From Antechinus flavipes (Eukaryota), in contig NC_067400.1 in the NCBI RefSeq assembly GCF_016432865.1, positions 624,464,001-624,528,000 on the forward strand: a DNA stretch of 64,000 nt. Reading direction: 5' to 3'. The position numbers and the translations under genes are program-made. The notes beneath the pieces were generated by a model. The model made no database searches. It worked only from the letters and a program-made list of their open reading frames with translations, and was not told where the DNA came from. Positions 21,713 through 23,587 of the stretch are shown here, in pieces. Each line of letters opens with the position of its first letter. Position 1 is the first letter of the stretch.

Positions 21713-23587
21713 ATGGCGGACGGGCAGGTGAGTGCTGCTGACTGTGGCGGGCCCGGACTTCTCTGGAACCTCGGCCAACGGTAGCGGGGCCGCGCCTGAG
21801 CCACCCAGCGATGGGGCAGCGGGGGTTGAGCCGCGGTACCGGCCCGGCCGAGGCAGGGAAGAATCACGTGGTCTCAGGGTCTCGGGCCAGCCTTGACCCC
21901 CGCGTCTCCTCCTGCTCCCTCAGGTCTTGGTGATCGACGGGCGGGGCCACCTCCTGGGCCGCTTGGCGGCCATCGTGGCCAAGCAAGTCCTGCTGGGTAA
22001 GTGCGGGGGTCCGCGCCCCACGTGGGCGCGGGGAGGGCGCGCGGAGCCCGGGGAGGGAGGGCGCGCGGCAAGGCCGGTGATGAGGAACATTCACCATCTT
22101 TCGTTCGAGTCTCACGACCATGAGACCAAAACCATGCACCGCTCTGAGGCCTAGCCCGACCCCCACTCCCCCAGCCTCGCTCCGGCGCTGACCCGGGCTC
22201 CTTGTCCCCGCAGGCCGGAAGGTGGTGGTGGTTCGCTGCGAAGGCATCAACATCTCAGGAAACTTCTACCGGAATAAGCGTGAGTCGGGCGGGAGCGGGG
22301 ATTCGGGCGCGGCTGGCAAGTGATGTCCTTTCTCACGATGGTCTTCAGAGGTCCAGATGCCTGGTCCCTGCTGATTGTGCCTTAAGGCAGAGCTGATGCT
22401 GGCCCTGGGGGAGGGGCTGCTTCCATTACTCGGGACGGATTTTCACCCCCTTCTTCCCCCCCCACTCCTCCGCAGTGAAGTACCTGGCCTTCCTCCGAAA
22501 GCGCATGAACACAAACCCCTCCCGAGGCCCCTACCACTTCCGAGCGCCGAGCCGAATCTTCTGGAGGACCGTACGAGGTAGAAGCGGGGAGAGCGCCCTG
22601 CTCGTGGGGGGGCCGGGCCCGGGCTGTGATGATGGCGACTTTTGTCACAGGTTCGAGTTTAGCGACCATGAGATGACAAGATCCATGCACCTCCATCTGA
22701 GCTCTGGGAGGGAGGGGGTATTTGGTGCCCAACTAGAGATGAGGGGTGGCCCCTCACCTGAACTCTTCTCCGCAGGCATGCTTCCCCACAAGACCAAGAG
22801 AGGCCAGGCTGCCTTGGAGCGCCTCAAGGTGTTTGACGGCATCCCCCCACCCTACGACAAGGTGAGCTCCCCAAGGGTCTGCCCCCCTGGCGTCAGTGAT
22901 GCTCTGTGTTACCTACATTGTTTGAGGTCTCCCTGAGAAAACCAGTGTTACCTGAGACGCCCAACTTCAGCCAGCCCTGGGTGGGAGGCCCATCCCTAAT
23001 GTTCCACCATCACCCCATCGATCGGCTCCTTCCCTTGCAGCGTAAACGCATGGTGGTCCCAGCTGCTCTCAAAGTGGTCAGACTGAAGCCAACCAGAAAG
23101 GTGAGTGTGAAAGGGTTATTTCCCTAATTGGGGGGGAGGGGCTCTTTTCAGAACTGGGTGCAGTGATTCCTTCGTGTATTTCTCCCTACAGTTTGCATAC
23201 CTGGGGCGCCTGGCCCATGAGGTTGGCTGGAAATACCAGGCTGTGACTGCAACATTGGAAGAGAAGAGGAAAGAGAAAGCCAAGATCCATTACAGAAAGA
23301 AAAAGAAGCTTACGGTGAGACACGGGTTGGGGGGAGCCACGGGAGACACCTGGCAGATGATGTTTGTTCTCACGATGGTCTTCGGATGCCTCCGGGGTAC
23401 TGCCGACAAAGCCACATGGCTCAGCTGATGCCAGGGGACTTGGCGGGGAGGGAGCTGCCAGGTTCCTGGACCCACAGTCACAGTTTGTTTTCTCCCACAG
23501 AAACTACGAAAACAGGCAGAGAAGAACGTGGAAGGCAAAATCCACAAATACACAAAGGTGCTGAAGAAGCACGGGCTGCTGGTGTGA
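21713..23587 (+). CDS. RPL13A: 60S ribosomal protein L13a (uL13), 8 exons, 203 aa
   Basis: Exons 21713-21727, 21924-21996, 22214-22279, 22476-22577, 22776-22861, 23041-23100, 23192-23314, 23501-23587; [21 protein letters not shown]; APSRIF (Ser77) retained; AATAAA 23592-23597. Confidence 0.99.
22071..22152 (+). ncRNA. SNORD32A: Box C/D snoRNA U32A, RPL13A intron 2
   Basis: Terminal stem aggcc/ggcct, box C GTGATGA 22077-22083, D' guide TTCACCATCTTTCG (28S Am1511), D guide CCATGCACCGCT (18S Gm1328), box D CTGA 22144-22147. Confidence 0.93.
22311..22404 (+). ncRNA. SNORD35: Box C/D snoRNA of the U35 family (second copy), RPL13A intron 3
   Basis: 8-bp stem ggctggca/tgctggcc, box C GTGATGT 22320-22326, guide TCTCACGATGGTCT (28S Cm4506), D' CAGA 22346-22349, box D CTGA 22393-22396; 71 nt from the 3' splice site. 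Confidence 0.88.
22621..22704 (+). ncRNA. SNORD33: Box C/D snoRNA U33, RPL13A intron 4
   Basis: Stem gggc/gctc, box C GTGATGA 22626-22632, conserved core ttcgagttt..cgaccatgagatgac, guide CCATGCACCTCCAT, box D CTGA 22697-22700. Confidence 0.9.
22889..22961 (+). ncRNA. SNORD34: Box C/D snoRNA U34, RPL13A intron 5
   Basis: Stem ggcgtc/gacgcc, box C GTGATGC 22896-22902, guide TTACCTACATTGT (28S Um2824), D' TTGA, box D CTGA 22952-22955. Confidence 0.92.
23349..23435 (+). ncRNA. SNORD35A: Box C/D snoRNA U35A-like, RPL13A intron 7
   Basis: Stem cctggca/tgccagg, box C ATGATGT 23357-23363, guide TCTCACGATGGTCT, D' CGGA, box D CTGA 23425-23428; 3' half resembles recalled human U35A (gacaa.gcca..tggct.agctgatgccagg). 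Confidence 0.92.

What the first reader, a model, noticed from the sequence alone, without database searches (positions are those of the whole stretch)
22311..23435. SNORD35 copies sit in different host introns than in eutherians (RPL13A introns 3 and 7)
Seen: two complete U35-family snoRNAs at 22311-22404 (intron 3) and 23349-23435 (intron 7). Each has box C, the 28S Cm4506 guide TCTCACGATGGTCT, D', box D and a terminal stem, and ends 71 or 65 nt from the 3' splice site, the usual spacing for processing. RPL13A intron 6 is only 91 nt and RPS11 intron 3 only 83 nt, and neither contains a snoRNA. Recalled knowledge: human and mouse carry U35A in RPL13A intron 6 and U35B in RPS11 intron 3, with RPL13A introns 3 and 7 empty. 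Inference: both U35 copies moved in one lineage, so RPL13A here hosts five snoRNAs and RPS11 none.
Basis: partly seen in the sequence, partly recalled or inferred. Interest (0 to 1): 0.75.

Follow-up and report, generated by a model that had tools for sequence, protein, structure and literature searches.

The report
Marsupial U35 snoRNAs in shifted introns
This marsupial's RPL13A gene carries two intact copies of the U35 ribosome-modifying guide RNA in introns 3 and 7, a layout shared by five other marsupials and different from placental mammals, but it is a case of the known turnover of snoRNA copies between introns, not a one-off move.

Summary
Rfam finds two SNORD35 genes in RPL13A: 22315-22405 in intron 3 (60.9 bits) and 23352-23437 in intron 7 (89.9 bits). 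Both have box C, the 14-nt guide, box D and a terminal stem. Intron 6 (91 nt) and RPS11 are empty.

The window is marsupial. Five other marsupial assemblies, including Dromiciops, show the same five-snoRNA layout, and both copies are better conserved than their flanking intron.

- Hippo, bat and marmot carry U35 in RPL13A intron 6, and bat and marmot also carry it in RPS11 intron 3.
- Elephant and manatee carry intact U35 in introns 6 and 7. Their RPS11 intron 3 holds a truncated U35B relic with a shared 47-nt deletion.
- Intron 7 is therefore not a marsupial-only host, and "both copies moved in one lineage" is not supported.

At least four host introns have been used among therians, with two intact copies in each lineage sampled. 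Snake, emu and Xenopus RPL13A carry no U35.

A short-sequence tree pairs copies across positions but does not resolve orthology. Expression could not be tested. This is a good example of a known phenomenon and of modest interest.

The parts
21713..23587 (+). RPL13A coding region, 8 exons (21713-21727, 21924-21996, 22214-22279, 22476-22577, 22776-22861, 23041-23100, 23192-23314, 23501-23587)
   Evidence: all introns are GT-AG, the CDS is 612 nt and has a single terminal stop. Exons 7 and 8 translate 100% identical to Sarcophilus harrisii RPL13A isoform P0259. tblastn with marsupial protein P0329 recovers exons 2-8.
22311..22405 (+). SNORD35-family box C/D snoRNA gene in RPL13A intron 3 (box C 22320-22326, guide 22331-22344, box D 22393-22396, terminal stem 22311-22318/22397-22404)
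   Evidence: Rfam RF00211 60.9 bits, E 7e-12. Fold with an 8-bp terminal stem, z -2.35. Found at the same position in 5 other marsupial loci at 50.4-69.2 bits. 65 alignment columns are invariant among five marsupials, against 30 of 148 in the flanking intron.
23349..23437 (+). SNORD35-family box C/D snoRNA gene in RPL13A intron 7 (box C 23357-23363, guide 23368-23381, box D 23425-23428, terminal stem 23349-23355/23429-23435)
   Evidence: Rfam RF00211 89.9 bits, E 2e-20. Found at the same position in 5 other marsupial loci at 84-91.5 bits. 78 of 86 columns are invariant, against 49 of 113 in the flanks. An intact SNORD35 also sits in intron 7 of elephant and manatee RPL13A.
23101..23191 (+). 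RPL13A intron 6, 91 nt, no snoRNA. This is the intron that hosts U35A in eutherians.
   Evidence: One search gives the coordinates. No Rfam hit and no nhmmer hit at E<=100.
22070..22153 (+). SNORD32/33-family snoRNA in intron 2 (the position of U32A)
   Evidence: RF00133 70.7 bits. The same intron carries it in all mammals sampled.
22619..22706 (+). SNORD33-family snoRNA in intron 4
   Evidence: RF00133 56.0 bits. The same intron carries it in all mammals sampled.
22889..22962 (+). SNORD34 in intron 5
   Evidence: RF00147 44.8 bits. The same intron carries it in all amniotes sampled.
31309..33143 (+). RPS11 coding region, 5 exons. Intron 3 is 32363-32445 (83 nt) and intron 4 is about 442 nt. 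Neither holds a snoRNA.
   Evidence: Sequence read. tblastn with uS17 protein P0283. No SNORD35 at E<=5 and none by nhmmer.
33571..33650 (-). mir-150 precursor, a synteny marker downstream of RPS11
   Evidence: RF00767 73.8 bits. It lies in the same place in the elephant, manatee, bat, marmot and marsupial loci.

Best explanation
Both elements are intact box C/D snoRNA genes of the SNORD35 (U35) family. Each would be released from its RPL13A intron after splicing, assemble with the fibrillarin, NOP56, NOP58 and SNU13 proteins on its C/D kink-turn, and use the 14-nt element upstream of box D' to direct 2'-O-methylation of one cytidine in the conserved 28S segment annotated as Cm4506 in human.

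Hosting in introns 3 and 7, with nothing in intron 6 or in RPS11, is the standard layout of at least the australidelphian marsupials. It is not a peculiarity of this genome.

Across therian mammals the family has occupied at least four host introns in the adjacent RPL13A-RPS11 gene pair:
- Marsupials keep RPL13A introns 3 and 7.
- Elephants and manatees keep RPL13A introns 6 and 7, plus a dead relic in RPS11 intron 3.
- Boreoeutherians keep RPL13A intron 6 and RPS11 intron 3.

The difference from human and mouse therefore comes from duplication into neighbouring introns followed by differential loss of redundant paralogues. Two intact copies were retained in every lineage sampled.

Shown: presence, intactness, intron assignment, conservation and the afrotherian relic. 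Inferred: processing, snoRNP assembly, methylation activity and the order of gains and losses.
For: - Family and intactness: Rfam scores well above gathering for both copies. Boxes, guide and terminal stems were read from the sequence.
- Intron assignment: exon model.
- Marsupial-wide layout: five other assemblies (L007-L011, including Dromiciops L008) have D33-family in i2, D35 in i3, D33-family in i4, D34 in i5 and D35 in i7, with no D35 in RPS11.
- Constraint: the snoRNA columns are much better conserved than the flanking intron. The intron-7 copy has 78/86 invariant columns against 49/113 in its flanks. The intron-3 copy has 65 invariant columns against 30/148. The two guide substitutions in the L007 intron-3 copy are transitions (A>G, C>U); by my memory of the 28S target they would keep pairing as G-U wobbles.
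- Eutherian comparison: hippo, bat and marmot have D35 in i6 only; bat and marmot have D35 in RPS11 i3; elephant and two manatees have D35 in both i6 and i7.
- Relic: afrotherian RPS11 intron 3 retains the 5' half of U35B followed by a 47-nt deletion shared by elephant and manatee, inside alignable flanking intron (nhmmer E 0.003 and 0.0005; alignment A2).
- Outgroups: no D35 in RPL13A of snake, emu or Xenopus. The chicken U35 homologue is reported in RPS11 (PMC2653536).
- Target: the Cm4506 assignment for U35A/B comes from PMC6466398 and PMC3511168.
Against: - There is no RNA evidence.
- The short-sequence tree (93 columns) groups marsupial i7 with the boreoeutherian RPS11 copies (95/95) and marsupial i3 with afrotherian i7 (89/91). 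This fits actual relocation better than simple positional orthology. The tree that holds all intron-7 copies together is disfavoured but not rejected (AU p 0.066).
- No monotreme, xenarthran or American marsupial DNA could be fetched, so ancestral states are not fixed.
Confidence: 0.8

Rival explanations
1. The eutherian layout (RPL13A intron 6 plus RPS11 intron 3) is ancestral. In the marsupial lineage both copies relocated, to intron 3 and intron 7.
For: Boreoeutherian loci do show i6 plus RPS11 i3. The tree places marsupial i7 copies with the RPS11 copies at 95/95 support. Chicken U35 is reported in RPS11, so an RPS11 host could be old.
Against: Elephant and manatee have an intact copy in intron 7, so that host is not marsupial-specific. 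No relic is found in marsupial intron 6 or RPS11 intron 3, even where intron 6 is 141-193 nt long. Snake, emu and Xenopus RPL13A have no U35 at all, so intron 6 has no support as an ancestral host. The tree rests on 93 partly paired columns.
Confidence: 0.12
2. The intron-3 copy is a decaying, non-functional duplicate, and only the intron-7 copy works.
For: It scores lower against Rfam (60.9 bits here, 50.4-69.2 in other marsupials). Its internal region is variable, and the L007 copy has two guide substitutions. There is no expression data.
Against: It is retained with box C, guide, C', box D and terminal stem in six marsupial genomes that share only about 75% identity across the locus. Its columns are far better conserved than the flanking intron. 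The L007 guide changes are transitions that, by my memory of the target, keep pairing as wobbles. It sits 70 nt from the 3' splice site. A truly dead copy, the afrotherian U35B relic, looks quite different because it is truncated.
Confidence: 0.1
3. Independent insertions. The intron-7 copies of marsupials and afrotherians arose separately, so no U35 position is shared between the two groups.
For: The tree does not unite the intron-7 copies. Afrotherian i7 groups with marsupial i3 at 89/91, and the AU p for i7 monophyly is 0.066. Pairwise identity between marsupial i7 and afrotherian i7 is only 73-77%, against 79-85% between marsupial i7 and eutherian i6.
Against: The copies lie in the same intron at a similar distance from both splice sites. 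This scenario needs more events. The AU test does not reject monophyly. The grouping characters lie largely in one hairpin whose paired sites are not independent.
Confidence: 0.3

Closest known systems
SNORD35A (U35A), hosted in RPL13A intron 6 of eutherians
   Same: It belongs to the same Rfam family (RF00211) and has the same host gene and the same 14-nt guide TCTCACGATGGTCT. It has the same box architecture and a similar distance to the 3' splice site. The marsupial intron-7 copy is 82-85% identical to the hippo, bat, marmot and elephant intron-6 copies.
   Different: The host intron differs. Marsupials have nothing in intron 6 and carry copies in introns 3 and 7 instead.
SNORD35B (U35B), hosted in RPS11 intron 3 of boreoeutherians
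   Same: It belongs to the same family and has a near-identical guide. The marmot RPS11 copy is 84% identical to the marsupial intron-7 copy, and the two groups cluster in the tree at 95/95.
   Different: The host gene differs. Marsupial RPS11 intron 3 is 83 nt and empty. In elephant and manatee the RPS11 copy survives only as a truncated relic.
Afrotherian RPL13A intron-7 SNORD35 (elephant L002 13688-13772; manatee L014 13725-13812)
   Same: It sits in the same host intron as the window's downstream copy and has intact boxes, guide and stem. Scores are 68.1 and 73.2 bits.
   Different: It is only 75-77% identical to the window's intron-7 copy. Its 3' hairpin resembles the marsupial intron-3 copy. 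I found no paper describing it in the held library.
Chicken GGgCD67, the U35 homologue in chicken RPS11 (Shao et al. 2009, PMC2653536)
   Same: It is predicted to guide the homologous 28S cytidine and is hosted in one of the same two ribosomal protein genes.
   Different: It is reported in RPS11 'intron 4', and I could not tell whether that corresponds to mammalian intron 3. Emu and snake RPL13A carry no U35.
Known snoRNA paralogue turnover by intragenic duplication (chicken: PMC2653536; eukaryote-wide: PMC3511168)
   Same: In the described pattern, paralogues arise in adjacent introns of the same host and are differentially retained between vertebrate lineages. That is the pattern seen here.
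   Different: This locus adds a documented dead relic and four alternative hosts for one guide. In every lineage sampled, two intact copies remain.

Membership tests
SNORD35 / U35 (Rfam RF00211) | Covariance-model score at or above the curated gathering score (36 bits), full-length match | tested here: met
   60.9 bits for the intron-3 copy and 89.9 bits for the intron-7 copy, both matching model positions 1-88.
SNORD35 / U35 (Rfam RF00211) | Box C (RUGAUGA-like) near the 5' end and box D (CUGA) near the 3' end, brought together by a terminal stem | tested here: met
   GTGATGT / CTGA with an 8-bp stem in the intron-3 copy, and ATGATGT / CTGA with a 7-bp stem in the intron-7 copy.
SNORD35 / U35 (Rfam RF00211) | 5' antisense element upstream of box D' that matches the family's 28S Cm4506 guide | tested here: met
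   TCTCACGATGGTCT is identical in both copies and to the Rfam consensus. It is shared by 18 of the 21 mammalian copies aligned. The target assignment comes from PMC6466398 and PMC3511168.
SNORD35 / U35 (Rfam RF00211) | Base-pairing of the guide with this species' own 28S rRNA, with the target C at the fifth position from box D' | not testable with these tools
   There is no rDNA in the window and none was fetched. Pairing was inferred from my memory of the conserved 28S sequence.
SNORD35 / U35 (Rfam RF00211) | Accumulation as a stable ~85-95 nt nucleolar RNA bound by fibrillarin | not testable with these tools
Intron-encoded box C/D snoRNA processed by splicing-dependent exonucleolytic trimming | One snoRNA per intron, sense strand of the host gene, about 60-90 nt upstream of the 3' splice site | tested here: met
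   Both copies are on the + strand of RPL13A, one per intron, 70 and 63 nt (Rfam ends) from the 3' splice sites. The spacing rule itself is established knowledge that I did not re-derive here.
Ortholog of eutherian SNORD35A (by position) | Located in RPL13A intron 6 | tested here: not met
   Intron 6 is 91 nt and empty in the window, and empty in five other marsupials.
Ortholog of eutherian SNORD35B (by position) | Located in RPS11 intron 3 | tested here: not met
   RPS11 intron 3 is 83 nt with no signal. By sequence, however, the intron-7 copy clusters with the RPS11 copies.

The most novel reading that the evidence does not exclude
The U35 family in therian mammals behaves as a dosage-held pair whose members really change address. 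By sequence, the marsupial intron-7 gene is the counterpart of eutherian U35B (RPS11 intron 3), and the marsupial intron-3 gene is the counterpart of the afrotherian intron-7 gene. If so, functional snoRNA genes relocated repeatedly between introns of two adjacent ribosomal protein genes, while selection kept two active copies in each lineage.
Probability: 0.25. Interest if true: 0.45.

Novelty: new member of a known kind. Interest (0 to 1): 0.3.

Why it matters
U35A and its RPL13A neighbours are studied in mouse and human as mediators of oxidative and metabolic stress, and the locus is usually treated as having a fixed layout. This work shows three things about it.

- The layout is lineage-specific. 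Marsupials use introns 3 and 7, elephants and manatees use introns 6 and 7, and boreoeutherians use intron 6 plus RPS11 intron 3.
- The early eutherian carried three U35 genes.
- Each sampled lineage ended with two intact copies.

This gives a small, well-bounded system for asking how redundant snoRNA paralogues are gained, kept and lost, and whether copy number is under selection. It also warns against transferring intron-based snoRNA annotations or knockout designs between mammals. The shared 47-nt deletion in the RPS11 relic is a rare genomic change common to elephants and manatees. None of this changes how snoRNAs are understood to work, because snoRNA mobility between introns is already established.

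Tried and rejected
- Literature for host-intron numbers: Michel 2011 (PMC3138526), Lee 2016 (PMC5127695) and the platypus snoRNA paper (PMC2413168) are not held. Held papers name the host genes but not the introns. The Xenopus, zebrafish and human snoRNAome papers do not mention SNORD35, RPL13A or RPS11 in the main text. I therefore took the eutherian intron numbers from non-human eutherian loci.
- The look-up of encoding contigs gave nothing for Acomys isoform P0168. The tarsier locus, and five of the ten marsupial places returned (seven assemblies I could not identify), came back without DNA. The turtle uS17 hit was an intronless retrocopy, L006.
- Relic searches with nhmmer --max at E<=100 found nothing in eutherian RPL13A intron 3, boreoeutherian intron 7, marsupial intron 6 or marsupial RPS11.
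- An assembly artefact was rejected, because the same layout appears in six independent marsupial assemblies.
- A eutherian origin for the window was rejected. Only exons and snoRNAs align to eutherian loci, while 20-22 kb aligns at 80-83% mean identity to the three closest marsupial loci, L009-L011.
- Exons were joined only inside local scripts, to count frame and stops. The joined protein was never printed or sent to a search. Searches used exon 7 by reference and then database proteins.
- Two Homo sapiens protein entries appeared in a cluster listing and were not used. No human contig was fetched or compared.
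Full report
**1. What is in the window**

A gathering-threshold Rfam scan of all 64 kb returns six matches. Five lie in one small gene on the + strand:
- SNORD32/33 family at 22070-22153 (70.7 bits);
- SNORD35 at 22315-22405 (60.9 bits, E 7e-12);
- SNORD32/33 family at 22619-22706 (56.0 bits);
- SNORD34 at 22889-22962 (44.8 bits);
- SNORD35 at 23352-23437 (89.9 bits, E 2e-20).

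The sixth match is mir-150 at 33571-33650 on the minus strand.

I read the host gene from the sequence and checked it in a script. It is RPL13A with eight exons, all introns GT-AG, and a 612-nt reading frame ending in one stop. The snoRNAs fall in introns 2, 3, 4, 5 and 7. Intron 6 (23101-23191) is 91 nt and empty.

RPS11 lies downstream (31309-33143, five exons). Its intron 3 (32363-32445) is 83 nt. Neither a permissive cmscan at E<=5 nor nhmmer --max at E<=100 finds any SNORD35-like sequence in it.

Both U35 copies have box C, the identical 17-nt stretch TTCTCACGATGGTCTTC that contains the guide, box D, and a 7-8 bp terminal stem.

**2. Whose genome it is**

Exon 7, exon 8 and the N-terminus translate identically to a Sarcophilus harrisii RPL13A isoform. 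Against eutherian loci only exons and snoRNAs align. Against three of the marsupial loci (L009-L011), 20-22 kb aligns at 80-83% mean identity. The window is therefore a marsupial, closest to, but distinct from, the two near-identical loci L009 and L010.

**3. How the comparative loci were obtained**

The exon-7 peptide, given by reference, was searched against protein representatives. A full-length bird RPL13A from that search seeded a word search. Cluster listings then gave named proteins, and the look-up of encoding contigs returned the genomic loci.

The joined window protein was never sent to a search. It was joined only inside local scripts, to check the frame. No human sequence was fetched, and two human protein entries seen were left unused.

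Exons in each locus were placed by tblastn exon by exon, and snoRNAs by Rfam at the gathering threshold.

**4. The layouts**

| Group | Loci | SNORD35 in RPL13A | SNORD35 in RPS11 |
|---|---|---|---|
| Marsupials | window, L007, L008 (Dromiciops), L009, L010, L011 | introns 3 and 7; intron 6 empty | none |
| Boreoeutheria | hippo L003, bat L012, marmot L016 | intron 6 only; introns 3 and 7 empty | intron 3 in bat and marmot; hippo RPS11 lies outside the locus |
| Afrotheria | elephant L002, manatees L014 and L015 | introns 6 and 7, both intact (80.6 and 68.1 bits in elephant; 74.3 and 73.2 in manatee) | no intact copy |
| Other tetrapods | snake L001, emu L004, Xenopus L005 | none | not in the loci fetched |

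All mammals sampled carry a SNORD33-family gene in introns 2 and 4 and SNORD34 in intron 5. The only sauropsid statement I found for U35 is that the chicken homologue lies in RPS11 'intron 4' (PMC2653536).

**5. A dead copy that dates the RPS11 host**

nhmmer finds a half-length match in RPS11 intron 3 of elephant (E 0.003) and manatee (E 0.0005). I aligned that intron with the marmot and bat introns. The afrotherian sequence keeps the 5' stem, box C and a degraded guide, then lacks 47 nt that cover C' and box D. The same deletion is present in elephant and manatee, and recognisable intron sequence lies on both sides.

U35B in RPS11 intron 3 therefore predates the split of Afrotheria and Boreoeutheria. 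It was disabled in the common ancestor of elephants and manatees. The early eutherian must have carried three U35 genes: RPL13A intron 6, RPL13A intron 7 and RPS11 intron 3.

**6. Are both marsupial copies functional?**

Among five marsupials whose loci share only about 75-83% identity, the intron-7 snoRNA has 78 of 86 invariant columns, against 49 of 113 in its flanks. The intron-3 snoRNA has 65 invariant columns, against 30 of 148 in its flanks. Variation in the intron-3 copy is concentrated in the internal loop.

The one intron-3 copy with guide changes (L007) has A>G and C>U. By my memory of the 28S target these would keep pairing as G-U wobbles, but I could not test this here. The real pseudogene in section 5 looks quite different. 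I conclude that both copies are under purifying selection.

**7. History**

By position, the simplest account is as follows:
- an intron-7 copy in the therian ancestor;
- a gain of the intron-3 copy on the marsupial stem;
- gains of the intron-6 and RPS11 copies on the eutherian stem;
- loss of the intron-7 copy in Boreoeutheria, with no relic left;
- loss of the RPS11 copy in elephants and manatees, with a relic left.

By sequence, a maximum-likelihood tree of the 21 copies (93 columns) instead groups marsupial i7 with the boreoeutherian RPS11 copies (95/95). It also groups marsupial i3 with afrotherian i7 (89/91). The constrained tree with all intron-7 copies together is worse by 8.6 log-likelihood units but is not rejected (AU p 0.066).

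Much of that signal lies in one hairpin, GCCA..TGGC versus GCCTT..AAGGC. Its paired sites are not independent, and I defined the groups after seeing the alignment. I therefore treat the tree as a lead, not a result.

Both copies did not move in one lineage away from an ancestral eutherian-like layout. Intron 7 is used in eutherians too, and the eutherian layout is itself the product of differential loss.

**8. Comparison with what is known**

Both elements pass the membership tests for SNORD35 that could be run. These are the model score, the boxes, the stem, the guide and the intronic placement. The tests that could not be run are pairing to this species' own 28S and RNA accumulation.

By position they are orthologues of neither U35A (intron 6) nor U35B (RPS11 intron 3).

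The underlying process is already described for chicken, platypus and eukaryotes generally (PMC2653536; PMC3511168). It consists of intragenic duplication of snoRNAs into neighbouring introns and differential retention between vertebrate lineages. A search of the held literature for SNORD35 with opossum found nothing relevant. Automated genome annotation has probably labelled these genes already.

**9. Verdict**

The feature is real, the description is accurate and the layout holds across at least the australidelphian marsupials sampled. The evolutionary reading needs correction. What is new is the detail:
- four alternative hosts for one guide;
- three copies in the early eutherian;
- a dated relic;
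- two intact copies in each sampled lineage.

No new kind of system is involved. Interest is modest at 0.3. It would rise to about 0.45 if denser sampling showed true relocation under a copy-number constraint.

Noticed in passing
L001 (snake) 16580-16663 and 22315-22397; L005 (Xenopus) 12304-12376 and 12545-12619; L004 (emu) 10317-10396: The SNORD32/33-family genes also change host intron across tetrapods. They sit in RPL13A introns 3 and 6 in the snake, introns 1 and 2 in Xenopus, and intron 2 only in emu, against introns 2 and 4 in all mammals sampled. SNORD34 stays in intron 5 in the amniotes sampled and is not detected in Xenopus.
   Followed up: partly
L002 20073-20119; L014 19913-19956; L015 19907-19950: A truncated SNORD35B relic lies in RPS11 intron 3 of elephant and manatees. 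The 47-nt deletion that removes C' and box D is identical in both, a rare genomic change shared by these two afrotherian lineages.
   Followed up: yes
L008 (Dromiciops) 14325-14400, minus strand: A mir-147 precursor match (62.1 bits, gathering 57) lies between RPL13A and RPS11. It was not reported at the gathering threshold in the other marsupial loci or in the window.
   Followed up: no
window 31650-32050 (RPS11 intron 1): A run of roughly 40-nt imperfect tandem units (GTGTGTGCCCACC...CCCCCAGTT) fills much of RPS11 intron 1.
   Followed up: no
protein clusters listed (P0277, P0278, P0285): Short contigs of 530-603 nt deposited as Klebsiella pneumoniae and Shigella flexneri encode proteins that sit in the 90%-identity clusters of mammalian RPL13A and RPS11. 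They are labelled 50S L13 and 30S S17. This looks like host contamination of bacterial assemblies.
   Followed up: no
protein clusters listed (P0288, P0294, P0297, P0298, P0303): Fukomys (585 aa) and pig (415-500 aa) have gene models much longer than RPL13A. One cluster mixes RPL13A and RPS11 proteins, which suggests read-through or fused annotation of the adjacent genes.
   Followed up: no
That copy scores only 56 bits here and 50-54 bits in other marsupials, against 84-91 bits in eutherians. I did not examine it further.
   Followed up: no
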